Shown: positions 8,646-56,534 of the stretch, piece by piece
How the letters are laid out: each line of letters opens with the position of its first letter
Position numbering within the stretch: position 1 is the first letter of the stretch
NCBI RefSeq assembly: GCF_021869535.1
Contig: NW_026262734.1
Location: 59,210,001 to 59,274,000 of the forward strand
Direction of reading: 5' to 3'
Length of the DNA stretch: 64,000 bases
DNA from: Mytilus californianus
Taxonomy: Eukaryota
Program-made: the position numbers and the translations under genes
The notes under the pieces: model-generated
What the model saw: only the letters and a program-made list of their open reading frames with translations
Told to the model about the DNA's origin: nothing
Databases searched by the model: none

Positions 8646-8825
8646 NNNNNNNNNNNNNNNNNNNNNNNNNNNNNNNNNNNNNNNNNNNNNNNNNNNNNNN
8701 NNNNNNNNNNNNNNNNNNNNNNNNNNNNNNNNNNNNNNNNNNNNNNNNNNNNNNNNNNNNNNNNNNNNNNNNNNNNNNNNNNNNNNNNNNNNNNNNNNNN
8801 NNNNNNNNNNNNNNNNNNNNNNNNN
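8646..8825. other. Assembly gap (180 N)
   Basis: Run of n characters. Confidence 1.
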
Positions 8826-23755: not shown

Positions 23756-26239
23756 ATCTAAAATGCTTCTTATTATTTGTTTATTTTTTCTTAATTGGTT
23801 TAAACAGATTTACAAATCAGCTTAACACAATAAACCTATTATTAAGATAAAAATGAAATGAGCTTCATTTCACTTGGATATATTTAACTCAGGTTAACAT
23901 GATTAATCGTACTGTTTTCTTAATCGAATCAAACAAATGTGTTTATTCTGAATGTTCAATATGAAGATCGTTTGAAGATATTTCCTTCTGACGTAGCAAG
24001 TATATATAAACATTGGTTTTGGAATGAATTTAAGCAAAACTATAGTACATTTGTCACTCCCTCTTTATCGATCATCCGGATTATTGTTATGTGGTTTTCA
24101 AAATGTTAAGAATTACTGATATATAAATAGGAAGATGTGGCATGAGTGCCAATGAGACAACTCTCCATCCAAGTCACAATGCATATATGTATACAAAGTT
24201 AACAATTATACGTCAAAGTACGGCCTTCAACATGGAGCCTTGGCTTACACCGATCAGCAAGCTATAAAGGGCCTTAAATTGACTAGTATAAAAAAATTCA
24301 AACAGGAAAATCAACGGTCTAATCTATATGAAAAACGAGAAACGAAAAACGAGAAACACCTATGATATGCTTTTATTGTAAGCCGATTTATTATTTTGGA
24401 CTAATTTCCAATATTGTTATATATGGATATAAAAGACAAGAGAAATGTACGTAAACATTTAATGAGAAGGAAACATTTTCAATAAGTGTCAATAAAATGC
24501 AACAAATGACATTTAGAGGCAAAATCCAGAAATTGAATACAGAGATGAGACTATAATTAATGTCGAGGTCTTAATAGTCCCATGTTTAAAAATGTTGTTA
24601 ATAAACTAACACATGTAACAGAAGAATCAAAGTCCGATCGTTAACACCTAATTCGAAAAATAACATTTTGATATTACATACAGCATTCCTTAAATGTACA
24701 ATTGTATCAGTGTTTTACGTACATGGTGAACTTACCTTTCCAATAGAACTTTGTTCATTCAAAGTTTCATGTCAAATAAAAGGGATAATACAATTTTATT
24801 ACAAAAGTGTAATCAATGATCATGTTGACCCATATTTCAGTTCTTCTCAAAAGGTGAATTTTAAAAACTACCAAATAAAAATTTAGCATGAAAATATTAA
24901 AATAATGAAATCCGAAGCGAGAAGTTTATCTCTTTTTTTGTTTTTATAAGTTTTAACGTTTAAAAAGTAGATTCCAACACACCCGAATGTAAAAGGTGTA
25001 CGCGACTAACTTTAAAAAAAATTTTCTATAATTTCATTCAAGATAATTTGACAGAAATTTATATCATTAATACATTTATCAAATAGTATTTTTTTAGCCT
25101 TCAACTATAGTAATGCATGGGACGAGGTTTTTGGTCCATGTACACCTAAACGTGCACTCGCAAATACATGGGTAGAAGGCATACTCCCCCCTTTCGATCG
25201 CCAAATAATTTTGAAAATCTCACGTTTTCCAAGTTATCTATACAAATGTTTAGTATATAATCGTCTAATTTTTTTCTCTCGTTGCTCCGCTCGGCAGTAT
25301 AAATGCAATTATCGGGAACTATGCCCTCTTTCAAATATCTTGGATCCGGCCATAATCACAAATTGTATGGCACCAAAAAGAAATTAAACGATTGTCGTTT
25401 GACTTCACCATGTCATCATGACGTCATAAATATTTTAGAACTGACAAAAGGGTCAACACATGTTAATGTATATATCTCTTCTGTTAAATTTGTTTTCACG
25501 TAATATTCTTATTAACATTAATAACAATAATTTTGAGGGCCCGAAAAGAAACATTCAAAATAAAATTCAATTTACTATGCGTTTATATCATACGGTAGAG
25601 AACTATGTCCAATTAATCTAGAAGTTTGTTATTAAAAAACTTTGTAATTTTCGAATTCAAAGGAGGTAATATTACCTGAGTTAACTTTTGAATTATCTCA
25701 ATCCAAATGAAATATAAAATCTCAATAGTTTTCATATAAAACAAATTACGTACTTAAACATATAAATCAAGTTAGTAAATGCAAGCTAATTCGATTATAC
25801 AGTGAAAATATGAACTAGGCATAATAGAAACAACTGAACCTGCGTAACAAATAGTTACTAAAGATTACTTTATTTTCATGTTAATCAACCTTTAAGATTT
25901 GTGACAAAATAATCAAAACATACATGTAGTATAACAAACATAAAATGTATAAATAATAAAAATAAAGCATGACTTTTTGTATAATTACACAAAATAGTTC
26001 AGTTTATAATTCAATTGCGTACCCGCAACTATTAGTACTAATGACTATTTAATAAAGAAAATCATCGTTTCTATTTTTTTGTATTGATGCCAGTTCTATG
26101 GTTTTAAATATGAAACAGAAAAACAATCAAACACATTAAAAACACTTCAGATAACTTTGATTGTTTCGAAAACTTTTCAAAACAAGTGAGGGAGATAATA
26201 TTGAATGATATAAACGAATAACGTATTGTCCTGAAATTG

Positions 26240-26409
26240 CTACAACTTTGATTCATATCTAGTCGTCTCTACACAGCCAGTATCAAGACTGCCGGGGTTA
26301 ACGATAGATTTTAGCTGCAATTTGTTGTACTGCATTCTTTCTTTGTAAATCTGTTCAAATTCAGCATTTTGTTGCAATGTAAAATAAGATTTCCAGTCGT
26401 CTTCTGTAC
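26240..26409 (-). CDS. Sulfotransferase A exon 5 (last; ends -SKL)
   Basis: ttttatatag| (G)TEDDWKSYFTLQQNAEFEQIYKERMQYNKLQLKSIVNPGSLDTGCVETTRYESKL*; 170 nt. Confidence 0.93.
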
Positions 26410-28045
26410 CTATATAAAACAACAAGATATCATATACATATATTGTTTAAATAAAAATATATGGTGTCTGAAATTTGCCTGTAGGTTTCCTTTATCAATG
26501 TTTCTCCTACAACTCTTTGTGCTTGGTAATATGTTTCATTGTACATTTTCAGTGCGGTCACTTTAGTGCAGAAAATTTGAACATGACGACACAAACATGT
26601 GAAAATAGGGTAATTAAATGGCAATATACATGTTTTGTCTGATTAAATTGGATATAAACAACACTTTACGAAAAAATCTATTTTCTGGATCTTGAACTGC
26701 TTGTATCTTTCATTTGCACCGGAATGCATTCATTTATTTAACCAATCATTTCCTTTAAACAATGCCTGTTCAATGTCAGGAGTATGACAGTTGTCCATCA
26801 TTCGTTCAGTTGGTTGATATTGTCTTACGTTTGATTTTTTGTCATTTTTTATAGACTTCCCCTTTTTTTAATTTACTGTGGAGTAAAGTATTTATAATAT
26901 AATACATTTTTATTAGGGGTATCTAAATGGGGAGCTTCATTCTGCTCAACTTGTAGCGTTCTGAGCAGTTAAATGTCATTCTAGTAGAAGCTTGTTGGTT
27001 GACTGGGTTTTTTTAAGCAGTGGTATTATTTGTCCTTTCTTTGTAGTTTCTAACTGCCACATTGGTATATTCTTGTCTTTTCACACTCATGGCTTCGTTT
27101 TTTATGCGAAAATTAGTGGTACGATCTTTTTGGGGAGGGCAGGGGTTTTGCTTACATCTAAGTATCGAAAAAGCAATCAGAATACGAGGTAGTATTTGTA
27201 ATTTATTATAGTCCCTGCCTCCAACAAATGAACAGACTAACACACATACAACAGTCGAAAATACACTTTACATACTGCAGAGTACCCATGAAAAACCAGG
27301 ATGAACTGATGTTCTCCGCAAGGATCGACAGTTCCCGCTCTATTACTCCCGTTTAAAGAGTCATATTCCTTTAAATGGCACCAGCAAAAAGGGATATTAG
27401 TTATGTATCTTATATATCTTAGCAAGTTTGAATAAATAATATATCTACATTTGTACTTAAAGTAAGTCTCTAAGTACACTGTAGTATCGATTATATTTAC
27501 AACATGTATCTTATTAAGCTTTGCACAGTACATAGTACATGAAACTGATACAATAGACAACGCCATTGAATACTGCCATAACTGCATTGAATTAATTCAA
27601 AAGTTTGATAACTGTAGGGTAACCATACTGGAAACGCCAGTCTAATCCATATACCATTGGAACAAAAAAATAACAAAACAACACAAAACTCCAGACAACT
27701 TTATTACACAAGACAAAGAACTAGCAGAACAAGATGTCCTATTAAACAACAAAATCAAAGAAATAAACAGCACAATAACATTGTAACAGCCATCATGATC
27801 AAAATATAAAAAGAAGCATATCGAACCGAAACAGTCAGAGGCTATTACAACTTTCAACTTTATGCAGTTTGACCTTAAGTGTCAGGTGAGCTAACAATGC
27901 TAAACACTTATCGGTATTAAAAACAAATCAGTTTAAACTGAAAATATTGACATAAAATTCTATTTATGTCAGTTCCTACACTGTGCATACTGTTGTTAGT
28001 ATAAGTTCGCACGGGAAACATACTATAAAATAATTATAAACTGAC

Positions 28046-28226
28046 CTTTCCGATATAAAGGATATTTATTGCCTGCAAATGCGTTTCCTAAACGGAGTCC
28101 AATGGCCACCTCTTTGGATGTTTTTATTTCCGAAAACTTTGTATTTTCTGCAATGGTCATTATCATAGATTCTTTTACATCTAGCTGAAGAAATCGAGCG
28201 AGTCTTTTAAACTCATAAAATGGATT
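28046..28226 (-). CDS. Sulfotransferase A exon 4
   Basis: tttttgcag| NPFYEFKRLARFLQLDV...KYPLYRKG |gtcagt; 181 nt, phase 0-1. Confidence 0.93.
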
Positions 28227-30024
28227 CTGCAAAAAGAAAATATATTGGACATCAGAATCAACGCAGCCATACTTTATTTTTTTCCTTACTAAATAGATTA
28301 TAAGCAAATACAGCAAATGCAAACCTTTGCCTGAAACATGTTTAAGCGGGAAACACGCAAATACTGTTTTTTTTAAACACACAAGAGAAATACAAATATT
28401 TATTATTTGAATTACAATTGTATATGACAGATACTAGATATACAAGAGACAAACAACATCTAACAAGATGTCTGAGATAAGACATCTAGATGAACGGATT
28501 GCACGTATAGTCAAGGAAAACAATGCTTTTCATTTGCAAACACAAATTGAATGGAAACAGTGTTGGCCACTGAAATGTAATGTACAAAACGTATTTATTT
28601 TGATACTCCAAGTTACATAGAAATGAAAAGTAAAGGAAAGATGTCATATGGACATTAAAGCCCTGTAGTAAAGCAATAATATAAAGTATTTTCAAAGATA
28701 GACCAAGTTTTAAACATTAATATGTGATACATTATTTTAATTAATCAATTAGCATAAATATGTTGTGAAATATTTCTTTGCTTTTTTCAACTTTGGCTTT
28801 TTAATGACTGTTTCTCTATTCCTTAATACATAAAGAATACGGATTGGTTGATTTTTATGTATATGGATTTTCAAAGGCCTTATAATTGCTTCCTGGTGTA
28901 TTTAATCAAACGTAGATAGTTTGCACGGTTAATAACATAAACGGTACTATTTTCTGCACCAGATGCGCATTTCGACAATCAATGTCTCTTCAGTGATGCT
29001 CGAGTTCAAAATATTAATCGTCAATAAGAATTGTTTACTGGCAGAAATTCAAATCTGAATACAATATTTATTATCGCTATTTTGTGTATTTTTTCTTTGA
29101 TCTTGTTTTGTGATAATTTTTAATGTCATGCTTCTCGCTTGAGAAAGAAAATTATCGCCTGAAAATAAGGGCGTACATGCCGTTGTCAATTTAAAGATCA
29201 ACGTTGTTATAGTCAAAATAGCGGTAAACAGATTACTAATGGTCTTTTAAACTCGATGTTGTTCGGTCACATCTCATCTCAGGGCTGTCGCCCTTCGATG
29301 AAATTGTAGCACAAGCAATATCCTTTCGCTTGAAAAACCATTAATAATCTATCAATATCAATATACAATTTGATTTTTATATCAGACATTTTCATGGTTA
29401 TCTTATACCAAACGGACTTTTTATTTTCCTGTTGTTATTATTCTTTTTTTTAATTGTCTGGTCTTCTTGAGTAAACATGTCAGTGTTGGTTTGATTTATA
29501 CATGTTTGCCAAAACGTCTAATAGATTTAAATGAACGATATCAATGAACGATTACCGTACTAATTCCAGTATTAAAAATTATCCAAATATATTTTTGTTT
29601 AAAAGATTCAAGAAGAGGTACTGGGAGCAAAGTTCATAAAGTGATACCCCCTGTTTTCAAAGTCCATGCTTTGCTAAGGGAAACCAAAATAATAATTCGA
29701 AAAAAGAGATAAAATATGAGATGAACCGGCAGTATATGGTGACGATTCAGAAAAAGTTTTAAAATTCTTATTATGAGTTTAGTAAAAGAAGCGATTAAAA
29801 ATATCTAATAAAGTGTACTGAATTTTACTAATGTCACAGAGACCATTTTGGTGCGAAAGCAAATACAACACAACAAGTCGGATACAAATCTGGGACACAA
29901 GGACGGAAACCTCTTACTGTATATCGACCGCATAAAGAAACAGGATTGGGTGTATGATTTTTATTATGTCATAATGTCATAATCCTCGGTTCATAACTCC
30001 AATTATATAAATACTAAAACATAC

Positions 30025-30128
30025 CTTTTTTGCATCTTCATAGGACAGAATATGTATGGGATTATCAGGATTGTTTTGTCTTACCCTCTCCCATAATTGT
30101 GTATGTTGAAACCAGTCGTTGAACAGAA
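30025..30128 (-). CDS. Sulfotransferase A exon 3 (not in ORF track)
   Basis: ctacttaag| VLFNDWFQHTQLWERVRQNNPDNPIHILSYEDAKK |gtat; 104 nt, phase 1-0. Confidence 0.92.
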
Positions 30129-30882
30129 CTTAAGTAGACATGTACTATTAGTTAATAAAACAAGATATTAAACTGTAAATGTATGTTATATAGATACAAT
30201 GGATAAGCGTGGATTCTTGAAAAAGAAACCATGAGCCCGGAGGGCGAATGGTTTGTTTTTCATGAATCTACGCTTATCCATTGTATCTATAACTTAAACT
30301 ATTGTGTTAATTTCTTTTCAAAATTAAAGCCTTTTCTTAATTAGAAGGTATTGTAAGTGAGTTTAAATAACCATGTCATCGTGTCCAACGATGCATTGAT
30401 AAATCTCAGATCACAATTAATTGGTTAACAATTAAAATACAAATATAACACTTCTACCTTTAAAGATCTTTATATTACCAGGCATAAGAATATTATCTGT
30501 TTATACAAAATAAGACATAATCGAAATTATTTCTAATAAAATTGAAAATAGAAATGGGGAACGTGTCAAAGAGACAACAACCCGACCAAAAAGCATATAT
30601 AAATTAAGTATATATAATAAGTATGTTATCGAAATTTTTCTAGCACTCTAGGCACATCACGATTTTCTTGCATAGGAATTTGCGAACAAACCTTTGTAAA
30701 ATTATGTAGTAAATCAGATGAAATCATACTATATTTATAAAACAAAAATTGACAAATATAATGTAATCATTTTTGTTTCAAACATGTGAAATAGCCAATA
30801 ATAATTAAAAAAAACCGGTAAAACTCGCTATTATTACAAAAATATCCACTATAACATGCAAAATTAGAAACAACAACAGAAT

Positions 30883-30990
30883 AAAATAAGAATTGGAACA
30901 ACAGAGAGAATACAGGGATTCGAACCTAACCGACAAATCCCTATCTTTAACTCATTGATTTTAACCATGCTCACCTCGCGGCTACCAACT
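30883..30990 (-). ncRNA. Candidate Pol III ncRNA, type 1 copy 1 (vault-RNA-like layout)
   Basis: Minus strand: AGTTGG-TAGCCGCGAGG (boxA-like) ... GGTTCGAATCCC (boxB) ... CCAATT-cttaTTTT. The 5'/3' terminal stem is AGTTGG/CCAATT. A TATATA lies ~30 nt upstream (31017-31022). Confidence 0.45.
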
Positions 30991-31107
30991 CATACTATAC
31001 GACTGCCTATTGTGTCTATATAAAGGAACAAGCCCTGTGTGTCCGATGAACCGATGTATATCAGATGTTCATTTAAATATATAAAATAGACATCTATAGC
31101 GTAACCC

Positions 31108-31225
31108 ATTGGTAGCCGAGAGGTTTCGTCGATGTGTTGATGTCAGTCACACATAACAGATTTCAAGGAAGGGTTCGACTCCCAGTGAAGGCGTATAAAA
31201 ATTACAAAATTAAAGGTAAGTTTTT
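31108..31225 (+). ncRNA. Candidate Pol III ncRNA, type 2 copy 1
   Basis: TATATAAA at 31078; ATTGG-TAGCCGAGAGG (boxA) ... GGTTCGACTCCC (boxB) ... TTTTT at 31221-31225. Confidence 0.45.
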
Positions 31226-32087
31226 AAATTAATTCCATTAGTGAACAGAAATCAGTAAATTAGCCAATTCAAACTTAATGAAATTAAGCACACAAAGGAA
31301 ACAATTGAATATAATTTGGTGAGTCAATTTCAGCGGCAGATTTAGGAAGCGTTGATTCTAGAAAAAGAATCCACGATAAATGAATAGGCTGACGTCACCA
31401 CAATGGTTTAAGTTATATAGATACAATGGATAAGCGTGGATTCTTGAAAAAGAAACCATGAGCCCGGAGGGCGAATGGTTTGTTTTTCATGAATCTACGC
31501 TTATCTATTGTATCTATAACTTAAACTATTGTGTTAATTTCTTTTCAAAATTAACGCCTTTTCTTAATTAGAAGGTATTGGAAGTGAGTTTAAATAACCA
31601 TGTTATCGTGTCCAACGATGCATTGATAATTCTCAGATCACAATTAATTGGTTAACAAAATACAAATATAACACTTCTACCTTTAAAGATCTTTATATTA
31701 TCAGGCATCTGAATATTATCTGTTTTTACAAAATAAGACATATTCGAACTTATTTCTAATAAAATTGAGAACGGAAATGGGGAATGTGTCAAAGAGACAA
31801 CAACCCGTCCAAAGAGTATATATAAAGTATATATAATAAGTATGTTACCGAAATTTCTAGCACTCTAGGCACATCACGATTTTCTAGCATAGGAATTTGC
31901 GAACAAATATTTGTAAAATTATGTAGTAAAACAGATGAAAATCATACTATATTTATACAACAAAAATTGACAAATAGAATATAATCATTTTTGTTTCAAA
32001 CATGTGAAATATCCAATAATAATCCAAAAAATAAACGGTAAAACACGCTATTATTACTAAAATATCCACTTTAACATGCAAAATTAG

Positions 32088-32201
32088 AAAAAAAAACAGA
32101 ATTGGGACAACAGAGATAATACAGGGATTCGAACCTAAACCGACAAATCCCTATCTTTTAACTCGTTGATTTTAAGCATGCTAACCTCGCGGCTACCAAC
32201 T
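32088..32201 (-). ncRNA. Candidate Pol III ncRNA, type 1 copy 2
   Basis: Same layout as 30883-30990, with terminal stem AGTTGG/CCAATT followed by ctg and a 9-T run. Confidence 0.45.
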
Positions 32202-32299
32202 TATACTATACGACTGCCCATTGTGTATATATAAAGGTACAACCCCTGTGTGTCCGATGTTCATTTATATATATAAAATAGACATCTAAGTTGTAACCC

Positions 32300-32418
32300 A
32301 TTGGTAGCCGAGAGGTTTCGTCGATGTGTTGATGTCAGTCATTCATAACAGATTTCAAGGAAGGGTTCGATTCCCAGTGAAGGCATATACAAGTTACAAA
32401 AATTAAAAGTAAGTTTTT
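32300..32418 (+). ncRNA. Candidate Pol III ncRNA, type 2 copy 2
   Basis: TATATATAAAA at ~32266; ATTGGTAGCCGAGAGG ... GGTTCGATTCCC ... TTTTT at 32414-32418. Confidence 0.45.
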
Positions 32419-32867
32419 AAATTAATTCCATTAGTGAACAGAAATCAGTAAATTAGCCAATTCAAACTTAATGAAATTAGACACACAAAGGAAACAATTG
32501 AATATAATTTGGTGAGTCCATTTCAGCGGCAGATGTAGGAAGCGTTGATTCTAGAAAAAGAATCCACGGTAAATGAATAGGCTGACGTCACCACAATGGT
32601 TTAAATTAGTTTAATTGCCTTTTTAAATACCTTATCACAGTAAGGTCAATATCTTTTCATATATAGGAAACTGCCTTTAAATCCTTAACAAGTTATTTGA
32701 ATTAGTATTATACTATGCTTAAAATTATTAGTTGATATAAGAAAATCATCACGTGCAATACTGATGACGTCTCTCTGTTGAGATAGCTTTTCTGGTCATG
32801 TCAGTAGCAAATGTCCTAAATAATGTTAAAGGAAGTAAAATAACAATTTAATTTTATCTAGTGCAAA

Positions 32868-32965
32868 TTGCCAAATTCCGAAACATCGGTAACGTTGTTT
32901 TGCTAAACTCGATGCACCCTAGAAAGAACGACGTAACCACTGTTTCTGAGTTTGGCAAATTGCTT
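32868..32965. repeat. ~95-bp hairpin element (second copy 51688-51775)
   Basis: aattccgaaacatcggtaacgt...acgtaaccactgtttctgagtt; 51688 copy aaactccgaaacagtggtaacgt...acgtcaccactgtttcggagttt. Confidence 0.75.
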
Positions 32966-33019
32966 TGTTGTTTTGTAAGTGGCAAACACAATATGTGATT
33001 CTTCCTTGCTTGTTTAGAG

Positions 33020-33265
33020 GGCCTCGGTTGCCTAGTGTTCTGAGTAGTCGAACTAAAGTATCACTAGCCTGTCAACACCGAAGTTGCAACTTCGAAGCCC
33101 GCACGTAGCAGGTGCGCTCGACTCCAATCTTTATTGACTATGATTATCAGTTTTCCTACCGAAGTCGGTGGCTTCCTTCACCAATAAAAACTGACCGCCA
33201 CGAAATAGAACAACAGTGCTGAAAGTGGCATTCATTACCAATATATCAATCAATTAATCTTATTT
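33020..33265 (+). mobile_element. tRNA-headed bivalve SINE (MetaSINE-like)
   Basis: Head ggcctcggttgcctagtg (boxA) ... acttcgaagccc (boxB); core cagttttcctaccgaagtcggtggcttccttcaccaataaaaactgaccgccacgaaatag; atcaat tail. Confidence 0.8.
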
Positions 33266-33509
33266 GAACCTAAATCAGCCCGACATGTGCGAGACTGTTC
33301 GGAGAAAAGTTGTTGATCTACTTTCGTGATAATAAATATTGCTCATTCTGTAGCTTAAGCATGATGTTGTGTAAATTCTTTTTAACAATATTCTTTTAAC
33401 GATTAAATAAGTTAGTTGTACATTTGCAGATTTGAAAAGCATAATCTTTCAAAACTACGAAAGAAATAATCGATAATTGTATATTTATAGAAGTGCATTA
33501 ATTGAATTT

Positions 33510-33720
33510 GATGAGACTGTCGTACAAGTGAGAGGTTTAGCGCTATAAAACCAGGTTCAATCCACCATTTTCTACATTTGAAAATGCAAGTCAGGAATAT
33601 GACAGTTGTTGTCCATTCGTTTGATGTGTTTTGTCATTTGATTTTGCCATGTGATTAAGGACTTTCCGATTGAATTTTCCTCGGAGTTCAGTATTTTTGT
33701 GATTTTAGTTTTTAATATTG
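33510..33720 (-). repeat. Copy of the 'aaaataccgaactcc' interspersed repeat
   Basis: Reverse complement of 54215-54425. Confidence 0.85.
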
Positions 33721-33757
33721 TAACCATCGAATGTTTATATTACAATGTAATTCTTAC

Positions 33758-34078
33758 CTTTACCGTCTAAAAATAGATTCAGATAACCAGACCAGGTACC
33801 TTTCCATTTAGTTTCTTTTAGTTTGTTAAAGAAATGAAAACTTGAAATTGCTACTGCTCTTGGGTCTCTTATAACATTAATTAGTTTGCATTTCTTTTGC
33901 CTGATTGAAACAGGAAGTTGTTCGTAATACAAATGGCTTCCGAGAACTCTTGGTGGTGGCGACTGTTGCATTTTTCTAACAGCCCCAAATTCTAAAATAT
34001 ATTTCGCTGGTATTTCCTTTGAAATATCCGATGTGTTATTAATTAGCATTGTCACTACTTCCCATATCCAATGGAAAC
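33758..34078 (-). CDS. Sulfotransferase A exon 2
   Basis: gatttcag| GFHWIWEV...PPPRVLGSHLY...IRDPRAVAISSFHF...YLNLFLDGK |gtaaga; 321 nt, phase 1-1. Confidence 0.95.
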
Positions 34079-34477
34079 CTGAAATCATAATGTATTACTC
34101 ACAGGTTTTTGTTTGCTTTACGTTCCATCTATGCCGAAGACTACATGTATATCAAATAGCGAGCATAAAGGTATTAAAAAAATAATGTTTGAAACAGTAA
34201 CACTTAAACATGTTAAATGTTTCTATTGTTTCTGTATAATTTACTTTTGGGCATTGTACAAAATCATGCCTTCCTGTACTGTTTATGACGTACATGTATT
34301 TGTATGAAATCTTCTATCAATACGCAGTGGTCAATATATCATACTGCTAAAATATATCACGGTATTGTACCCAATGAATTTAGTTGATATATAACTTACA
34401 GTATCTAGTAAGAAATGAACCTACTAAAGAAAATCTAATTTTATCCATTGAATCACCAAATTAAGGTCAAGTTCAGA

Positions 34478-35210
34478 TAAATAAAGGCAACAGTAGTATA
34501 CCGCTGTTCGAAACTCGTAATTCGATAGAGATAAAAACAAATCCGGTTAAAAACTAAAACTGAGGGAAACGCATCAAATATAAGAGGAGAACAACGACAC
34601 AACAAAAACACAACATTAAAATGTAACACACACAGAAACGAACTATAATATAACAATGGCCATTTTCCTGACTTGGTACAGGACATTTTAAGAAAAAAAT
34701 GGTGGGTTGAACCTGGTTTTGTGGCATGCCAAACCTCCCGCTTTTATGGCAACGTCAAACACAACACCAAAACGACAACATCACATGACAGGACCACAAT
34801 ACAAATAAATGGGAGAACATATAGGACAAAGAAACACACGAATAATAGCTTACAAAAGGTACTAGGCCTAAAATTCAATACGCCAGACGTGCGTCTCGTC
34901 CACACAAGACCAAACAGTGACGCTCAGATGAAAAAAGTTTGAAAGCCAAAACAAGTACAAAGCTGAAGAGCACCGAGGACCAAAACTTCCAAAAAGATGC
35001 GCCTAACACGGCCAGGGTTTTCTGCCTGGGACAAGAACATCCTTATTATTTAGAATAATTTATAATTTTGCAAACAGTAAATTTTATAAAATTACTATAT
35101 AATAGATATACATGATAAAACCGCAGTTGGGACTAACTACAGAATAAAAACGGATACAATACATACAACAACTTAATCCTCAACGCACAAGTGACGTCAC
35201 ATTTGAAATT
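34478..35210 (+). repeat. Abundant 'aaataaaggcaacagtagtataccgctgttc' interspersed repeat (other copy 61834-62240; partial 5250-5470)
   Basis: Shared 5' ~100 bp with 61834; the internal part is shared with 5250-5470. Confidence 0.8.
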
Positions 35211-35499
35211 CTAAAAAAAACACACAAAGTGAGGTCACATTTGAATTTGTAAAAATATTTCCCAAAAATAAGATAGGATTAGGATTAGGATTGATTCAAG
35301 ATTAGATTTGTAATACTGACATTACATTGATTAATAACAATGAAAATTACAGTACTTATTAATATCAAATTGTGGTAGTATTTAGATAATTAATTGTATT
35401 ATTTAGCTATGTTGGTGTTTCTTCTCAATCAAACTGTAAACCAAATATATCGTATAAATTTCGTTGAACTAAAAACTAATAAATGAAGGGGGTGATTAA

Positions 35500-36130
35500 T
35501 TATCTTTACCATAACACACGAATATAACAGAAAAGACGTTAAGACATTTGACAAAATCCGACGAGAATAACAAATATGACATCAAATTAAATACATGAAT
35601 TTGGGATAGAAAAGTACCGTGACACGTCTTATAGCAATGCGGTTTCACACTCAGCAAAACAGTCACAATCGGGAATAAGTCACGTTTGGTAATTATAAGA
35701 TCAGACGACGTAATGACAAACCACAATCTAACACGTGGTAAAAATGTCCTTAGTTAGTTTGGACAAAGACACATCGTATGGATCAACCAATTCGTGATGG
35801 TGTCCGTAAAATTTACGGAGTGTCATTTTTAATCTGTCCTTCTCATAACTTTGTTGGAGCAGTTTCTGCGTAAGGAGCACACTCCTGTGTATGAAGTCCG
35901 TATAGTGTGAACAAGCACGAGAATAACGTATCAATTGAGATATGTAAACACCATACGAAGGGGCAGAGGGTATGTTACTGCTGAGAAATGGGAAATTGAT
36001 AATTGGGAAGTTGAAATCGACCGGTTTATCATAGATTTTCGTGTGAAGTCGTCCATCTGTGTCAATATTGAGGAAAAGATCAAGGTATGAAGCAGTCCTT
36101 CTAGTATCAGTAGTATCCTTAATAAATCCG
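35500..36130 (-). mobile_element. 5'-truncated Penelope-like RT retroelement fragment
   Basis: IKDTTDTRRTASYLDLFL..DGRLHTKIYDK..DFNFPIINFPFLSSNIPSAPSYGVYISQLIRYSRAC..Y.DF..R..LLTQKLL..Y....L...LRKFYGHHHELV: RT thumb and C-terminal pattern of PLE-type RTs. Confidence 0.8.
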
Positions 36131-36394
36131 ACAGACGGAAATTCACTGTATACATCATAGTTTGAGCATTTATTTACTAGATCTAAAAAAAACGGACATG
36201 ATCTTGAGAGTGTACATAGTGGCTGTCGTTTGTTGCTGTATATTATATTTGTTTTTCGTTCATTGTTTTGCACATAAATCAGGTTTGAATTCTTTCACAA
36301 TTGTCATTTCGGGGCTTTTTATATCTGTCAATGTGGAATAAGTCTCACTCATTGTTGAGGACCGTACGGTGACCTGTCTGAATTGCAATCATAC

Positions 36395-36752
36395 CACATC
36401 TTCTTTTTTTATGTAATGGAACAAACAAACCAAGAAAATGAGGTCAAGGTCAGACGACCCCTCTCTGGCGGACATTTTTACTTTACAATCACGATATTCT
36501 TCAATATAGCTGACCTTTTACTCACAGTATCTCTGAGAAGAAAAAAACCACAAAAGTTTGACTAAGATATGGAATCACATCTTCTTTTTTTATGTAATGG
36601 AACAAACAAACCAAGAAAATGAGGTCAAGGTCAGACGACCCCTCTCTGGCGGACATTTTTACTTTACAATCACGATATTCTTCAATATAGCTGACCTTTT
36701 ACTCACAGTATCTCTGAGAAGAAAAAAACCACAAAAGTTTGACTAAGATATG
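36395..36752. repeat. Near-identical 181-bp tandem duplication
   Basis: Units 36395-36571 and 36576-36752; contain the aatgaggtcaaggtcaga motif also seen at ~34460 and 55730/55860. Confidence 0.95.
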
Positions 36753-37536
36753 TAATGAAACTAAGTGCAAATGAATGATCTTTGACACGTTTAATGCCTA
36801 AGCTTGCAATAATTATATATCCTAAATATTGGCCTATTACTGATAATTTTTGAAAAATCACGTGATGAAAACAATTTAAACGGTTTGTTCTTATTTGAAT
36901 TGTTCCAATTGTACCAGATTAGGGGTAGTGTTGGGCGCTCACAAACATGTTAAATCCCGGCATATCTTTTCTGTGCATCTTCCAAGTAATTAGTCTATAA
37001 ATCAGTGGTTGTCGTTGGCTGTTGCCTGTTAAATATGTTTTTCATTCCTAGTTGTAGTATAAATCAAGCCGTATGTCCGGACCTTTTATAACTAACTATA
37101 TGTTGGTTTTAACTCATTGCAGAAGGTCACACAATGACCCGTAATTGTTAAACTATTTGTTTGCCCTTTTGTGTTTATGTTCTCATTAGCAAAAATACTA
37201 CATATCGTTATTTTTATACGTCGTTTTTAAGCGATTGAATCGTGAACAGTGAAAATAAGTCGAGGACAACTGGTCTATTCTTAATGGAAACTAATCATTA
37301 TACCACATATGGATTATACATATATGCAGCTGGTCTGCACTCTTGAGATATAAAACTTGATACAAAAAGAGCACGCCGTTGCTGGATAAGCGTCTTTATG
37401 TTTGCATCCTGCGATTTTCAGGTAACGTAATACCTCATTTCAAAGTGGTAATACAAAACACAAAAAATTCACAGTTTGGTTGAGACATGATTTTTGCGTG
37501 TAAGAAATCTTTCAAACCTGCCGTTAAACGAAATAC

Positions 37537-37708
37537 CTGATTTCGGATATGAACAAATAATGACATCATTGTCATCGGCATCAAATGACTGCATATGTTT
37601 CCACTGTGAAGGTATATCTGGAATACTTGCTGGAAAATAACGTCCTTCATATTCTTTTACAGTTATGGATCCAGCTAAATCACTATCCGCAACAAAAGTT
37701 TTTAACAT
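37537..37708 (-). CDS. Sulfotransferase A exon 1 (ATG)
   Basis: ttttcatag|aaATG MLKTFVADSDLAGSITVKEYEG...DDNDVIICSYPKSG |gtattt; 172 nt. The five exons sum to 948 nt = 315 aa + stop. Confidence 0.93.
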
Positions 37709-40490: not shown

Positions 40491-40772
40491 CTAATAATAT
40501 GTATTGAACGTATTTGTTTTCCCTTATATTCTATTTATATACACAACAAATAATTAATGTCTACCATAAGTAGGTTATAATGTGGCAGAAACGTCTTAAA
40601 AATGTCATGGTTACTATAAAAATGTAAAAAATGTTCCCTATTGGAATTTTTCAAAACAATAGTAGTCTTTTTGTTAAATTTCTAATCTTCTTCAACACAT
40701 GCACGTTCGTCTATTTTTGGAGGTCGGGTTAGAGTTAATGTTTCTCAATTTTTTTATTTGCTGTGTAGTGTA

Positions 40773-40869
40773 GTGTGAAGTCGTCCATCTGTGTCAATAT
40801 TGAGGAAAAGATCAAGGTATGAAGCAGTCCTTCTAGTATCAGTAGTATCCTTAATAAATCCGACAGACG
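40773..40869 (-). repeat. 97-bp exact copy of 36041-36137
   Basis: gtgtgaagtcgtccatctg...ttaataaatccgacagacg is identical at both sites. Confidence 0.95.
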
Positions 40870-41171
40870 ATTGTCTGATCTAGGTTTGGTCATGTTGTCT
40901 GTCTATTTTGTCTTATAGGTTATGATTGAATTTTATCACTTGACTTGACATAAAGTAATGTGATCTTTTTTACAAAAAAGATAAGTATATTTTATATACT
41001 TGGATAATTAGGTTTAACCATAAGTACGTTTACTTACTTGCTTTTGTTTATCCAATCTTCAGAAATGTGCTGCTTTTTATAATAAGTGTCTCCCCGTACT
41101 CTAATTCGTCAAAAGTTCTTTCGTATGCAGTGACCTTAAGTGTGACATCTCTTGCTAGTTTACGGCAATCA

Positions 41172-44279: not shown

Positions 44280-44449
44280 CTACAACTTTGATTCATATTT
44301 AGTCGTCTCTACACAGCCAGTATCAAGACTGCCGGGGTTGACGATAGATTTTAGCTGCAATTTGTTGTACTGCATTCTTTCTTTGTAAATCTGTTCAAAT
44401 TCAGCATTTTGTTGCAATGTAAAATAAGTTTTCCAGTCGTCCTCTATAC
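44280..44449 (-). CDS. Sulfotransferase B exon 5 (last; ends -SKL)
   Basis: ttttatatag| (G)IEDDWKTYFTLQQNAEFEQIYKERMQYNKLQLKSIVNPGSLDTGCVETTKYESKL*; 170 nt. Confidence 0.93.
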
Positions 44450-47340
44450 CTATATAAAACAACAAGATATAAAATACATATTTATGTTAAAATAAAAATA
44501 TATGATGTCTGAAATTTGCCTATGGTCTGCCTTATCAATGTTTCTACCACAAAACTTTATACTTATTAATATTTCTCATTGTTAGATGAAAGGGATAATA
44601 CATGGTCATTTAAGTGCACAAATGTAATAATTATGTAACAGTGACGACATAAACATATAAAAATTGAAAATGGTGAGTTGCATCTGGTTTTATAGCTAGC
44701 TATACCTCCCACTTGTATGACATTTTTGTATATATAAAAATAAGAAGATGTAGCATGATTGCCAATGAAACAACTTTTCACAATAGATTAAATGACATAG
44801 ATATTAACAACTATAGATCACCGTACGGCTTTCAACAATGAGCAAAGCCCATACCGCATAGTCTGTTATAAAAGGCCCCGAAATGACAAATGTAACACAA
44901 TTCAAACGAGAAAACTAACGGCCTAATTTATGTACAAAATTATGAACGAAAAACCAATTTGTTATACAGCAACAAACGACAACCACTGAATTACAGGCTC
45001 CTGACTTGGGGCAGCCACATACAGTTATAGTTAATATAGTTCTGTAATATTTACAAAACTTGGTGAGCAATCCAAACATCATACGTAAATGTGACAATAA
45101 TTTGGATCCAGCAGCAAAAACCAAGTAAAATATAAAAATAGGTCAACAAAAACAAAACCAACACTATAGAAACCTCTTGCGTCCGAATCGCTATTCTGGC
45201 ATCGTTTCACAAAACTTCGTACCAAAAATCTTAAATCTTCCGTCGGTCGTATGTTTAAACGTAAGATTTTGACCGTTTCATAAAAAATCGAAAGTAAGAT
45301 TTTTTCGTAGATTCGATCGTAAACTTACGAGTCGTAAAAGGTAGTAGTAAGTCGAATCGTAGTGGTTTCATATGTTGACATTTTGTTAAAATCAACAACT
45401 TGTCATTATCAACAGAAAAAGTAAAATAACAAAAATACCGACATGACCGAGCTCCAAAGAAAATTTAATTTCCACGGAATAAATAAGAATACATGTACCC
45501 ATGTTATTTTGTCCCAATCAAGAGTTACTGAAAATTTAAACTCCTGAGAAAATCGTAAATTTACCATTCCTAAAAATACAGGCCTTTTGAGTTTATTTTA
45601 AGTGAACTAGAAGCAGCACCTAGCTTCCAAAAGTCCCCTTAATTGACCATTGAAAATAGAAGTGATCGAGTTTGATCAACTCTAGAGGGACATCCTCTTT
45701 TAATTAAGGAAGATTGGTACATTCCTTGCATTTTTGAATCACTGAATATTCCCAAAAAATAAAACACGAAACTTTTATTTACTAGTTCTTCAGTCGTATG
45801 TCATACGCAGTATACACCCAGCTTGTGGAGTTCTACACGGTGATTTTGAAGGTAATAATGAATAAATACGCCAAGCTAAAAATACAGTCATCCTCATTGA
45901 ATGCATGGCCTGGTGAATGAAAATGAAACTGATTAAATCAAGCAATTCATGCAAAAATCCATAAGGAGAAAAAAGCTCTCAAAAGTACATTAAAAGTGCA
46001 ACAGATGATTTATCAAGGCAACCCCTTATGTCCCGCCGCTATGTTTTAGTAGTAAAAATATCAGCTCGAACTAGTATCAATTTCGCTATTGCTCATGTTT
46101 ATTTTCCCCTCTAAAAAGTACTGAAATGTTTTTTTTATTAGTCGAATAATATGTATATTACTCGTGATATACTGTACATTAAGTGAAACACTTTTTTTAA
46201 CCGACATCAGGCCATAATTGCGTGTATGCCGAAAATCCAATGTACATGTATACATGTATACATAATTAAGTGACGCGCATCTGTGGTAGGAGACATGATA
46301 AATAACAGCAAATAAAAAATAACAGAAAACAGAATATTTGTTTTCGTGCGATAGATTATTTTCCCTCGAAATACTTTTCTGTTCCCTCGATTTATCCATT
46401 TAGGTATTCCCTGTAAATACATCTGACTTCGTCAAAAATATATTCGATATATAAAATTCCATTAATTACAATGTTAAGACGGTCCCTAGCATCGTCGATC
46501 ACGGTACATCTATGAATAAAAGAAAACAGTATATATAGGTTGATTATATCAACAAATACTCCCATAAATGCTCAGCAATTTCATCGCAAACAATAGAGTT
46601 ATAGTAAAGTATAAAGTCATAAAGATATTAGTTAAATATTTTTGCAGGAAACTGTATGATTGATTGATGTTCCGTGTTGAACATACAGTTGCAATATTTC
46701 ATGCATACGAAAACAAAATGAATCGATTCTGCAGATTTGTCGGCAAGTAACAATTTCTCTTTTTAAAAAGTGTGTGTTGGAAAGGGCAGAACATTTTCAT
46801 TGCAACAGGCCATCAACAGACCTCTAATAGCGATATTACAAGTATTCGTTAACGCGCTGAGAGTATGGCATTCGCCTGCACGGGGCATCGGATTTAACGT
46901 TTCCACTTCGACCGGACGTGGCTGCGTATTTATACATCCAGTACATCCGAACTGACTCCAGCAAGGTTTTACTTCATGACGAGACCAGACAGTACAATAT
47001 TTGTTTCTACCAGTCAATTCATTGGGCTGAAATAATAAGTAATGAAGGAATTGATCGGTTGGACATGTTGTTTGCATAACATGCCTGGTGACAAATAGGT
47101 TCAAAGAGAGAAAGTTAAGTAGTCGTGAAAGTACAAAAGTATACACCTCATGAATGGGAAAACATTTTACAGGCTCCATCTAACAGAGAACAAAAAATGG
47201 AAATACCGGTTGTATGAAAAAATATATAATGTATGGCATGGATGTTTGAGCTCATTAAACAAATATAATGATGAGCGATTAAAAGCATAAAAGCAAAGGA
47301 TATATTTTATTCCACGACAGACTCTTGAAGTTTAATGCGT

Positions 47341-47600
47341 TAATTTGATTGATTGATTGATTGCTCATGTATAACGCCACTTTCATTATTTTGTGCTACA
47401 TCGTGGCCGCCAATTGTTATTGATAGGGGCAGTCGAAGTGCCCGAGGAGTACCACCGAATTTTAGCAGGAAAACTGGCAATCCTAGTCACTGAATGGTCG
47501 GAGTCCGGCGACTGCGCCTGCTAAGAGCGGGGTTCGAATTAACCACCTCACGACAGTGTTAACATGCTAGTGATCGCTGTAGTTGACTTACTTATACAAC
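47341..47600 (-). mobile_element. tRNA-headed SINE (same family as 33020-33265); a more decayed copy at ~53925-54110 (-)
   Basis: Minus strand ggggacctcggtgtccgagttg ... aattcgaaccccgct ... gattgccagttttcctgct ... ccacgatgtag ... with a (caat)n tail. Confidence 0.8.
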
Positions 47601-49289
47601 TCGGACACCGAGGTCCCCATTCTTTGTAAAATTATGAGAATTACTTGTTTGCCTATAGTAGTGGTTGTTGATAATATTGAAATGTGTTTCCTATCTTTGA
47701 CATTTTCTTTCGAGTTAATTATATTTACAACATGCATCTACATGTATCCGTTATGATTCCAAGTATTTCAAAATTAAGATATAAAAACGTTTGCCGTTGC
47801 TTCTGGAAAAGTTTAGTTGCTTTGGATCATTTACAACAATTCTGCCTAATAGTATGCACCTAATTTTGTGTTACACTTAGAGAGCATATAGATTATAAAT
47901 GTCCTGTTCACCCGGTAGCATCTGTAATAAATTCAAGCTGAACATTAATATAAAAATTAGGAGATGTGGTATGATTGCCAATGAGACAACTATCAACCAA
48001 AGTTCAAATGGAGTGGATGTTAGTAATTATAGGCAACCGTACGGCCTTCAACAATTAGAAAAACCCATATTCATTAATTTAATCACCCCCATTATGTTGC
48101 TCCGAGCAAATATATATATAAAAAACATGTCACCATTTTTCGAAGGTTACAAGATATCAAATTCATTGATAGTGGCGGTGGGGCCATAAACGGTTCTTAA
48201 CATCAGTTGTCCTAATGATTGCAAGGGTCCGTTTTCAAAGAAATAGGAAAAGTCAGTTATAGCGTGTATAATAATAAATTTTTGGTTTAAGTTACTCTGC
48301 GATTACATCAAAATGAAACTGTGTACGCATGTTCATTATGTAGAGAACGGTTTAACATAATGCTATGCAAACTTCACATTGATATGTAATAGTGCTAGCG
48401 GGAATTGCTGTCCTATGGAATATTTTCTTTGCACAGATTCTGGTTAATGTATCGCTTTTTAATTATTTAAGATTAATGTTTTCGAACACAAAATGCTGGT
48501 TATTTGAGGGTCAGAATGGGGTTTACAGAATAGAGAATATAGGACTTGTATTACAGAAAAAACCGACCCCATATATATAGAACAGGAAAAATAGGACAAA
48601 ATAATATAGAATACAGATTAATCAGGTGAAGTAATATAAAGAATAAAGAATACTTTGCAAAATTAATAAAGAAAAAAGAAAAAAATGGTTTAAAAATTAA
48701 AGAATACAGAATTAAAGGAAACCCTCCTCGGACCCTATAATATTATTGATATTTTAATCTATAGTTACTAAACTCACGACCGTAGTGCACTCGTTAAGAA
48801 ATTGAGGCAAACGGGGTCTGGGTGATGTGGCCCCAGTGAGATTTAAGATACACCCTAATAGATACACAAATCAGTAATTTCAAATTGATTTTTGTCATTT
48901 ATGTGAATGAGAAATTTTGGGGAACTCTAACCCCAAGATACAAAAAAAATATGTACAAATGTATGCTTGATAATTTAATATCTCCTGACGAACATTATAT
49001 TCTAGGGTACAATAGAAGCAGATGCATAGTATTAACAATATGCGACGAAATGAACTTCTAGAGCTACATATCATGTTAATGCATAGATATTTCACTTTCT
49101 TAGCGTTGTCTAGACCGAATAATCTGTCTCTTGTGTGTTTATATTTGTCATTCCATATTTCCTTTTAATCATCTAGACTTGAGTTTATATATAAACAAAA
49201 CCCAACTGATAAACAGGGTGTATGAAATGACAAATAGGAAAACAGAAACTAGATGCTTAATGAAATTTCTACCACTTCATAATTAACCT

Positions 49290-51274: not shown

Positions 51275-51455
51275 CTTTCCTGTATAAAGGATATTCATTG
51301 TCTGTAAAAACGTTCCCCATACGTTGTCTAATAGCCGCATCTTTAGAAGTTTTCATATTCAAAAACTTTGTTTTTTCTGCAATGGTCCTAATTGTAGAGT
51401 CTTGTACATCTAGCTGAAGAAATCGAGCGAGTCTTTTAAATTCATAAAATGGATC
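51275..51455 (-). CDS. Sulfotransferase B exon 4
   Basis: tttttgcag| DPFYEFKRLARFLQLDV...EYPLYRKG |gtcagt; 181 nt. Confidence 0.93.
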
Positions 51456-52982: not shown

Positions 52983-53086
52983 CTTTTTTGCGTCTTCATA
53001 GAACAGAACATGTATGGGATTATCAGGATTGTTTTGTCTTACCCTCTCCCAGAATTGTGTATGTTGAAACCAGTCGTTGAACAAAA
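52983..53086 (-). CDS. Sulfotransferase B exon 3 (not in ORF track)
   Basis: ctacttcag| VLFNDWFQHTQFWERVRQNNPDNPIHVLFYEDAKK |gtat; 104 nt. Confidence 0.92.
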
Positions 53087-55025: not shown

Positions 55026-55047
55026 CTAAAATCGTGATGTATAAATT

Positions 55048-56362: not shown

Positions 56363-56534
56363 CTGATTTCGGATATGAACAAATGATGACATCATTGTCA
56401 TCGGCATCAAATGACTGCATATGTTTCAACTGTGAAGGTATGTCTGAAACACTTGCTGGAAAATAACGTCCTTCATATTCTTTTACAGTTATGGATCCAG
56501 CTAAATCACCATCCGCAACAAATGTTTTTAACAT
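56363..56534 (-). CDS. Sulfotransferase B exon 1 (ATG)
   Basis: cttttatag|aATG MLKTFVADGDLAGSITVKEYEG...IICSYPKSG |gtttgt; 172 nt. The five exons sum to 945 nt = 314 aa + stop. Confidence 0.93.

What the first reader, a model, noticed from the sequence alone, without database searches (positions are those of the whole stretch)
26240..26310. Sulfotransferases with a C-terminal extension ending in -SKL: candidate peroxisomal SULTs
Seen: both paralogs (also 44280-44350) extend ~20 aa beyond where SULT-fold proteins normally end (..KLQLK-SIVNPGSLDTGCVETT(R/K)YESKL*). The tail is nearly identical in both copies (one R/K change and one synonymous change). Established: C-terminal SKL is the canonical PTS1 bound by PEX5, while soluble PAPS-dependent SULTs are regarded as cytosolic. 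Inference: a peroxisome-targeted sulfotransferase lineage, implying peroxisomal sulfation or a different reaction on lipid or xenobiotic substrates. I know of no description of this, but cannot search. Glu just before SKL may weaken import.
Basis: partly seen in the sequence, partly recalled or inferred. Interest (0 to 1): 0.8.

Follow-up and report, generated by a model that had tools for sequence, protein, structure and literature searches.

The report
Mussel sulfotransferases with peroxisomal SKL tail
Two neighbouring, expressed sulfotransferase genes of the California mussel carry a conserved 19-22 residue C-terminal tail ending in Ser-Lys-Leu, the classic signal for import into peroxisomes; no enzyme of this family is described there, but localisation is only predicted.

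Summary
On the minus strand lie two intact five-exon SULT genes, g1 (26240-37708, 315 aa) and g2 (44280-56534, 314 aa). Both end in YESKL followed by a stop codon. They are identical to the Mytilus californianus proteins XP_052073208 and XP_052073211, which NCBI labels 'sulfotransferase 1B1-like' and '1C2-like'.

The tail runs 19-22 residues past the end of human SULT1B1 and of the nearest tail-less bivalve homologues. RNA data confirm the E3-E4 and E4-E5 splices and an unspliced read-through of the stop codon.

All 21 Mytilus relatives recovered end in Y[E/G]SKL. They come from five species and at least four paralogue lineages. A relative only 49% identical, probably from a deep-sea bathymodioline mussel, keeps the tail but ends in PKL, with synonymous changes in the Lys and Leu codons. 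The tail arose once. AlphaFold leaves the last six residues unstructured.

So this is a real, constrained tail with a canonical, probably exposed PTS1. Import is plausible (about 0.5) but untested. Three things count against it:
- SKL invariance alone is not statistically exceptional.
- An inner GCVE block is equally conserved, which hints at another role.
- No peroxisomal PAPS supply is known in molluscs.

I found no paper describing a PTS1-bearing SULT. The nearest precedent is a PTS1-bearing firefly PAPS synthase.

The parts
37537..37708 (-). g1 exon 1 (ATG at 37708; ends within the PKSG codons of the 5'-phosphosulfate-binding loop)
   Evidence: Gene model with GT/AG sites; product identical to XP_052073208
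33758..34078 (-). g1 exon 2 (FHW of the PSB loop, catalytic His106, Arg128/Ser136)
   Evidence: Pfam PF00685 E=1.6e-18; model
30025..30128 (-). g1 exon 3
   Evidence: Splice 28226->30025 seen in RNA contig X1 and 5 raw reads of X21
28046..28226 (-). g1 exon 4 (ends in the RKG codons)
   Evidence: Splice 26409->28046 seen in X1 contig
26240..26409 (-). g1 exon 5 (last exon: end of the SULT domain, the tail and the stop codon)
   Evidence: stranded RNA depth ~10-12 on this exon with the intron silent; X1 contig 26083-26335 has 0 differences across the stop
26243..26308 (-). g1 C-terminal extension, residues 294-315 (SIVNPGSLDTGCVETTRYESKL)
   Evidence: Lies beyond the end of the SULT1B1 alignment; absent from sister clades
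26243..26251 (-). g1 Ser-Lys-Leu codons (TCA AAG TTG), candidate PTS1; stop TAG at 26240-26242
56363..56534 (-). g2 exon 1
   Evidence: product identical to XP_052073211
54708..55025 (-). g2 exon 2
52983..53086 (-). g2 exon 3
51275..51455 (-). g2 exon 4
   Evidence: tblastn; model
44280..44449 (-). g2 exon 5 (last exon with the tail ...TTKYESKL and the stop codon)
   Evidence: most X21 reads laid on g1 exon 5 carry g2-specific letters, so g2 is transcribed too
44283..44348 (-). g2 C-terminal extension; the SKL codons are at 44283-44291

Best explanation
g1 and g2 are two members of a small tandem family of PAPS-dependent, cytosolic-type sulfotransferases specific to mytilid mussels. In the mytilid lineage the ancestral C-terminus (...KS-x-L, then stop) was extended by 19 residues, most simply by loss of the old stop codon (inferred). 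The extension has two parts. The inner part (P-G-x-x-[DE]-[TS]-G-C-V-E) is predicted to pack as a short hairpin against the last strand of the domain. The outer part ([RKSQ]-Y-[EG]-[SP]-K-L) is predicted to be flexible. In Mytilus it ends in the canonical PTS1 tripeptide SKL. The proposed mechanism is that PEX5 binds this free C-terminus and imports at least part of the folded enzyme into the peroxisomal matrix, giving a peroxisomal or dual cytosolic/peroxisomal sulfotransferase. Shown here: the genes are intact, spliced, transcribed and conserved; the tail is coding and constrained; the SKL ending is invariant in Mytilus. Inferred: PEX5 recognition, import, catalytic activity, and availability of PAPS in the organelle.
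For: Both genes have intact five-exon ORFs with GT/AG splice sites. They match PF00685 and have a SULT fold: the model has pLDDT 87.8, the top Foldseek hit is human SULT1B1 3ckl at E=9e-23, and the top phmmer hit is mouse SULT7A1 5x2b at E=5e-49. The catalytic and PAPS-binding residues are kept: Lys56, His106, Arg128, Ser136 and the Arg-Lys-Gly at 258-260. Stranded RNA reads cover the exons only, both splices into the last exons are confirmed, and a contig runs without a break from the tail through the stop into the 3'UTR. All 21 Mytilus proteins end in Y[EG]SKL; they come from californianus, galloprovincialis, edulis, trossulus and coruscus and from at least 4 paralogue lineages, including every annotated isoform. 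The tail clade is monophyletic with SH-aLRT 99, and its sister clades lack the tail. Against a 49%-identical relative, 12 tail residues are kept despite 7 synonymous codon differences, including Lys AAG/AAA and Leu TTG/CTT at the last two positions. Between g1 and g2 the tail is 97% identical while the flanking intron and 3' flank are 80-83% identical. The last six residues have pLDDT <50, so the end is predicted to be free. Tyr at -5 and Arg/Lys at -6 are favourable PTS1 context, and YQSKL is the model PEX5 ligand (my own knowledge: Gatto et al. 2000; Neuberger et al. 2003). In plants SKL overrides moderately inhibitory upstream context and PKL is an accepted weak PTS1 (PMC9542071).
Against: There is no localisation or binding data. 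SKL invariance within Mytilus is not exceptional: 49% of domain columns and 42% of the other tail columns are also invariant, giving p ~0.07-0.12 for three columns. The inner GCVE block and Tyr311 are equally invariant, which a mere linker would not need, so the tail may be kept for another reason. The distant relative has Pro at -3 (PKL), which is non-canonical for animal PEX5. Half of the paralogues have Glu at -4, and acidic residues at -6 to -4 reduce targeting in plants (PMC9542071). No PAPS synthesis or import is known for mollusc peroxisomes. Low dS in exon 5 (0.07, against 0.22-0.33 in exons 2 and 4) means the g1/g2 tail identity may partly reflect gene conversion.
Confidence: 0.5

Rival explanations
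1. These are cytosolic enzymes. The extension is conserved because it forms a structural or regulatory hairpin on the SULT body (the GCVE strand, perhaps a redox-sensitive Cys or a lid or dimer contact). The SKL ending is then incidental or only weakly or never used for import.
For: G304, C305, V306, E307, P298 and Y311 are invariant across Mytilus and the 49%-identical relative. AlphaFold places a short strand at 305-307 after strand 290-292, with pLDDT 68-74. The terminal Ser is replaced by Pro in the distant relative. SKL invariance is statistically unremarkable. All characterised soluble SULTs are cytosolic or nuclear (my own knowledge), and no paper in the library describes a peroxisomal one.
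Against: The terminal Lys-Leu is kept through synonymous codon changes over deep divergence. The last six residues are predicted to be unstructured, so a structural role does not explain their conservation. SKL is the strongest PTS1 and is usually sufficient when exposed.
Confidence: 0.36
2. The C-terminus is a different short linear motif, for example a class I PDZ ligand (S/T-x-hydrophobic-COOH) that tethers the enzyme to a scaffold.
For: S-K-L-COOH formally fits the class I PDZ consensus (my own knowledge). The tail-less sister clades also end in S-x-L.
Against: The PKL variant breaks the PDZ class I rule but not the broad PTS1 rule. An S/T-x-L/I ending is a family-wide feature of the last SULT strand (SEL or TEI in human SULT1s), so it is not evidence of a motif. 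No scaffold partner is known.
Confidence: 0.07
3. The tail is an annotation or assembly artefact, or a non-functional read-through.
For: None found.
Against: There are two copies in the window and independent NCBI models in five species. RNA contigs and reads support the exon. The amino-acid sequence is conserved despite synonymous changes.
Confidence: 0.02

Closest known systems
Vertebrate cytosolic sulfotransferases SULT1B1 / SULT1C2 (PDB 3ckl, 3bfx) and mouse SULT7A1 (5x2b)
   Same: Same fold and domain (PF00685), 30-32% identity, same catalytic His and PAPS-binding Lys/Arg/Ser/RKG residues. SULT7A1 shares the His in the PKSG-x-H-W loop.
   Different: The vertebrate enzymes end 19-22 residues earlier and have no PTS1. 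Mytilus has Phe instead of Thr after PKSG, and DDWK instead of GDWK. Both changes are shared with the tail-less bivalve sister clades.
Firefly lantern sulfation system: luciferin sulfotransferase plus a PAPS synthase (ASKSA) that carries a PTS1 (Fallon et al. 2018, PMC6191289)
   Same: It is the only published suggestion I found that PAPS-dependent sulfation chemistry may take place in an animal peroxisome, also inferred from a C-terminal PTS1.
   Different: In fireflies the PTS1 is reported on the PAPS synthase, not on the sulfotransferase. Here it is on the sulfotransferase, and the PAPS synthase of mussels was not examined.
Canonical PTS1 cargo (firefly luciferase -SKL; PEX5 model ligand YQSKL)
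   Same: Identical terminal tripeptide, Tyr at -5, basic residue at -6, flexible C-terminus.
   Different: Glu at -4 in half of the paralogues. The upstream 'linker' holds a conserved GCVE block. Import has not been shown.
Tail-less bivalve homologues (Mizuhopecten, Pecten, Sinanodonta, Potamilus; 34-39% identity)
   Same: Same SULT subfamily signature (PKSG-L/F-HW, RKG-xx-DDWK) and the nearest relatives in the tree.
   Different: They end at ...KLTSML...LRSSL and the like, with no extension.

Membership tests
Cytosolic-type (soluble) sulfotransferase, Pfam PF00685 | Significant match to the Sulfotransfer_1 profile | tested here: met
   Exon 2 alone scores E=1.6e-18, 67.5 bits against a cut-off of 22. 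The full-length relatives carry PF00685.
Cytosolic-type (soluble) sulfotransferase, Pfam PF00685 | SULT fold | tested here: met
   AlphaFold model with pLDDT 87.8 and pTM 0.88. The top 50 Foldseek hits are all SULT structures, TM 0.7-0.87.
Cytosolic-type (soluble) sulfotransferase, Pfam PF00685 | 5'-phosphosulfate-binding loop PKSG-T-T/x-W with the catalytic Lys | tested here: met
   The loop PKSGFHW is present with Lys56, Gly58 and Trp61 kept. Thr is replaced by Phe, or by Leu in the sister clades. The effect on PAPS binding was not tested.
Cytosolic-type (soluble) sulfotransferase, Pfam PF00685 | Catalytic His and 3'-phosphate-binding Arg/Ser and RKGxxGDWK | tested here: met
   His106, Arg128, Ser136 and R258-K259-G260 are invariant or nearly so in the 51-sequence alignment. 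The Gly before DWK is Asp in this clade.
Cytosolic-type (soluble) sulfotransferase, Pfam PF00685 | PAPS-dependent sulfonation activity | not testable with these tools
   Needs a recombinant enzyme assay.
PTS1 cargo of PEX5 | C-terminal tripeptide [SAC][KRH][LM] | tested here: met
   SKL in g1, g2 and 21 of 21 Mytilus relatives. PKL in the distant relative.
PTS1 cargo of PEX5 | Free, accessible C-terminus | tested here: inconclusive
   Residues 310-315 have pLDDT <50 in the model, and residues 294-309 have pLDDT 68-74. This is a prediction only.
PTS1 cargo of PEX5 | Permissive residues at -4 to -6 | tested here: inconclusive
   Tyr at -5 is invariant and Arg/Lys at -6 is usual, both favourable. 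Position -4 is Glu (unfavourable) or Gly and toggled about 4 times on the tree. No PTS1 predictor was available.
PTS1 cargo of PEX5 | Conservation of the signal in orthologues | tested here: met
   Invariant in five Mytilus species and at least 4 paralogue lineages. Lys-Leu is kept with synonymous changes in the 49%-identical relative. The statistical strength is modest, p ~0.1 within Mytilus.
PTS1 cargo of PEX5 | PEX5 binding and import into peroxisomes | not testable with these tools
   Needs experiment.

The most novel reading that the evidence does not exclude
Mytilid mussels have a dedicated peroxisomal sulfonation step. A SULT lineage acquired a PTS1 by stop-loss extension and works inside the organelle on lipid, sterol or bile-alcohol-like substrates or on xenobiotics. 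This implies a peroxisomal PAPS supply and PAP removal route in an animal. It would be the first sulfotransferase shown in peroxisomes, in a tissue (the mussel digestive gland) where peroxisome proliferation is already used as a pollution biomarker.
Probability: 0.3. Interest if true: 0.75.

Novelty: new variant of a known kind. Interest (0 to 1): 0.55.

Why it matters
Soluble sulfotransferases are textbook cytosolic phase-II enzymes, and PAPS is made in the cytosol and nucleus. A conserved, exposed SKL on a SULT lineage predicts a new compartment for sulfonation, or a PAP/PAPS-related function in peroxisomes. It gives a simple test with reporter fusions with and without SKL. It also links to the single earlier hint of peroxisomal PAPS metabolism, in fireflies. 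In mussels, digestive-gland peroxisomes respond strongly to organic pollutants (my own knowledge). A peroxisomal conjugating enzyme would therefore be relevant to ecotoxicology. If import fails, the finding is reduced to a lineage-specific C-terminal hairpin of unknown role on an otherwise ordinary SULT.

Tried and rejected
- Word search with the last-exon peptide alone found no candidates. The length filter and the need for shared words make this blank uninformative.
- A metagenome-contig scan with an alignment of last-exon peptides confirmed no relative, so I got no independent genomic copy of the PKL tail.
- I tried to name the organism of the PKL-ending transcripts from their run accessions through the literature, without a useful hit. 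The bathymodioline assignment rests only on genomic fragments of the same 90% cluster occurring in a hydrothermal-vent metagenome.
- Translating the pectinid-like transcript L001 through its stop codon, to look for a relic of the tail, showed no similarity. The stop-loss origin therefore stays an inference from the alignment.
- I considered using the g1/g2 identity of the tail as proof of selection, but did not rely on it. Exon 5 as a whole has low dS, so the outcome depends on the neutral baseline chosen.
- Earlier notes of this scan held nothing on PAPS synthase or on other SULTs with a PTS1.
- No PTS1 predictor was available. I did not type the spliced protein into any tool; the identical database protein P0151 was used instead.

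Full report

The reported coordinates lie on the minus strand. Reverse-complement translation gives open frames ending ...KLQLKSIVNPGSLDTGCVETTRYESKL* at 26240 and ...TTKYESKL* at 44280.

From the stop-to-stop frames and the splice signals I built two five-exon models:
- g1: 37708-37537, 34078-33758, 30128-30025, 28226-28046 and 26409-26240, giving 315 aa.
- g2: 56534-56363, 55025-54708, 53086-52983, 51455-51275 and 44449-44280, giving 314 aa.

All introns are GT/AG and both ORFs are intact. A tblastn of g1 against the window finds only these two genes.

**2. What are the genes?**

Exon 2 matches Pfam Sulfotransfer_1 (PF00685, E=1.6e-18).

An exhaustive profile search with exon 2 returned a 315-aa protein, P0001, and then a steep drop to relatives at or below 40% identity. 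Word searches seeded with P0001 and with an alignment, plus cluster look-ups, gave the family.
- g1 is identical to XP_052073208, 'sulfotransferase 1B1-like' of Mytilus californianus.
- g2 is identical to XP_052073211, 'sulfotransferase 1C2-like'.

The window is therefore M. californianus, and both genes are already in NCBI's automatic annotation. A third paralogue, XP_052073210, lies outside the window.

A model built on a 51-sequence alignment has pLDDT 87.8. Its best structural matches are all cytosolic SULTs, with human SULT1B1 3ckl first. By sequence the best solved relative is mouse SULT7A1 (5x2b, E=5e-49).

The catalytic and PAPS-binding residues are kept: Lys56, His106, Arg128, Ser136 and Arg-Lys-Gly at 258-260. 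The unusual PKSG-Phe-His-Trp loop and the DDWK motif are not specific to the tail-bearing genes. The tail-less pectinid and unionid sister clades have PKSG-Leu-His-Trp and DDWK as well.

**3. Is the tail a true extension?**

phmmer aligns the last exon up to its residue 35 (Ser294) with residue 296 of the 298-residue human SULT1B1. The nearest bivalve homologues end ...KLTSML...KLTSLL...LRSSL or ...LKSSL. That is exactly where Mytilus continues with ...LKS-IV-NPGS....

The extension is therefore 19 residues beyond the ancestral stop, or 22 counted from Ser294.

In a tree built without the tail columns, the tail-bearing proteins form one clade (SH-aLRT 99) nested among tail-less bivalve SULTs. 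This indicates a single origin. Loss of the ancestral stop codon is the simplest model, but it is inferred. The 3'UTR of a pectinid-like transcript shows no relic of the tail.

**4. Is it transcribed as predicted?**

Four public runs were laid on 25900-30200.
- The stranded raw-read RNA run X21 covers exons 3, 4 and 5 at depth about 6-12. All of this coverage is in the orientation expected for a minus-strand RNA.
- The introns are silent, apart from two repeat-derived patches covered on both strands.
- The junctions 28226->30025 (X1 contig plus five X21 reads) and 26409->28046 (X1 contig) match the model to the base.
- An X1 contig (26083-26335, no differences) runs from the 3'UTR through the stop and the tail. 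No alternative splice removes the SKL end.
- Most X21 reads over exon 5 carry g2-specific letters and a minority carry g1 letters, so both copies are expressed.
- One contig of another species label (X13) joins exon 3 directly to exon 5. This would shift the frame, so it is a minor isoform or another paralogue.

All NCBI isoforms recovered also end in SKL.

**5. Is the tail, and the SKL, conserved?**

Twenty-one Mytilus proteins all end in Y[E/G]SKL. They come from californianus, galloprovincialis, edulis, trossulus and coruscus and from at least four paralogue lineages that predate these species.

A relative with about 49% identity is known from RNA contigs of four runs. Genomic fragments of the same 90% cluster occur in a hydrothermal-vent metagenome, so it is probably a bathymodioline mussel. 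It keeps the tail as ...TPGSLETGCVEVAQYGPKL.

Codon by codon against g1, twelve tail residues are identical despite seven synonymous differences. These include the terminal Lys (AAG/AAA) and Leu (TTG/CTT). The tail is therefore translated and under purifying selection over a deep divergence.

Between g1 and g2, exon 5 is 97% identical while the adjoining intron and 3' flank are 80-83% identical.

Two cautions apply.
- Exon 5 has low dS (0.07) compared with exons 2 and 4 (0.22-0.33). The g1/g2 identity may therefore partly reflect gene conversion and is weak evidence by itself.
- Parsimony counts on the tree show that the tail evolves about as fast as the domain (1.18 against 0.96 changes per column). 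49% of domain columns and 42% of the other tail columns are invariant in Mytilus. Three invariant terminal columns thus have p of about 0.07-0.12.

The most conserved tail elements are Pro298, Gly-Cys-Val-Glu at 304-307, Tyr311, Lys314 and Leu315. Position -4 toggles between Glu and Gly about four times.

**6. How does it most likely work?**

AlphaFold predicts a short strand at 305-307 (Cys-Val-Glu) after strand 290-292, with moderate confidence (68-74). The last six residues (RYESKL) fall below pLDDT 50. The tail thus looks like a small hairpin followed by a free end.

A free C-terminal SKL, with Tyr at -5 and a basic residue at -6, fits the PTS1 recognised by the PEX5 TPR domain. YQSKL is the classical ligand (my own knowledge: Gatto et al. 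2000; Neuberger et al. 2003; Brocard and Hartig 2006).

About half of the paralogues carry Gly there. In a large plant study, SKL overrode a moderately inhibitory upstream pattern and was blocked only by an all-acidic upstream peptide, while a single acidic residue at -6 to -4 gave partial targeting of weak tripeptides. The same paper lists PKL as an accepted weak PTS1 (PMC9542071). These are plant data and may not transfer to animal PEX5.

My best reading, at about 0.5, is PEX5-dependent import of at least part of the enzyme pool.

The main rival, at about 0.36, is that the tail is kept for a structural or regulatory role and the enzyme stays cytosolic. It is supported by:
- the conserved GCVE block;
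- the Ser-to-Pro change in the distant relative;
- the lack of any known PAPS source in mollusc peroxisomes.

**7. Comparison with what is known, and novelty.**

The phrase 'peroxisomal sulfotransferase' occurs in none of about 8.4 million full texts. Searches combining sulfotransferase with PTS1, with peroxisomal targeting signal, with SKL, or with Mytilus gave nothing that describes a SULT with a PTS1. I read only the relevant-looking hits.

The closest precedent is in fireflies. There the lantern-enriched PAPS synthase orthologues are the only paralogues carrying a PTS1, which led the authors to suggest that sulfoluciferin and luciferin levels are regulated within the peroxisome (PMC6191289). 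In that case the signal is on the PAPS synthase, not on the sulfotransferase.

Among the 150 nearest cluster representatives of this SULT exon, only this family ends in a core PTS1 tripeptide.

The genes themselves are annotated. The tail and its possible meaning appear undescribed. I class this as a new variant of a known kind.

**8. Verdict.**

The tail is real, expressed and constrained, and it ends in a canonical and probably exposed PTS1 throughout the genus Mytilus. Whether it drives import, and what chemistry would follow, needs experiment. Interest is moderate to fairly high (0.55). The idea is surprising for the field and cheap to test, but it rests so far on a three-residue motif whose conservation is only modestly significant.

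Noticed in passing
window 26240-26409 vs 44280-44449: Exon 5 has a much lower synonymous divergence between the paralogues (dS 0.07) than exons 2 and 4 (0.22-0.33). On the domain tree, g1's closest relatives in M. galloprovincialis carry a different tail variant (NN..EDT..GSKL), while g1 shares its variant with g2. This may be a short gene-conversion tract over the last exon.
   Followed up: partly
P0156, P0159, P0160, P0038, P0023, P0162, P0014 (tail-less sister clades): The tail-less bivalve relatives end in SML, SLL, SSL or SFL, often with Arg/Lys at -4. All four tripeptides are listed as verified weak PTS1s in plants (PMC9542071). This is probably just the family-wide S/T-x-L/I ending of SULTs, but I did not examine it further.
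   Followed up: no
window 28924-29355 and 26764-26907 (introns 3 and 4 of g1): These patches show very high RNA depth on both strands in all four runs, with many variants and loose ends. They look like interspersed repeats transcribed from elsewhere, not part of the SULT transcript.
   Followed up: no
window 36041-36137 and 40773-40869: A 97-bp stretch is 100% identical between intron 1 of g1 and the intergenic region. It lies inside ORFs that share a peptide (35728-36273 and 40735-40893), probably fragments of one mobile element family.
   Followed up: no
window 26409 -> 30025 (run X13, another species label): One contig joins exon 3 directly to exon 5, skipping the 181-nt exon 4. This would shift the frame and remove the SKL end. 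It is a minor isoform or a paralogue in a related species.
   Followed up: no
P0155, P0189, P0161 (M. edulis, M. coruscus, M. galloprovincialis paralogue lineage): One paralogue lineage has a three-residue insertion in the tail (GCV-MCV-E), an apparent tandem duplication of the Cys-Val motif. The SKL end is kept.
   Followed up: no
P0181 (M. edulis XP_071177695, 651 aa): This model is about twice the normal length, sits in the same 90% cluster and ends in YESKL. It is probably a fused gene model of two tandem SULT paralogues.
   Followed up: no
window 8646-8825: A run of 180 N (assembly gap or masked). I left it untouched.
   Followed up: no
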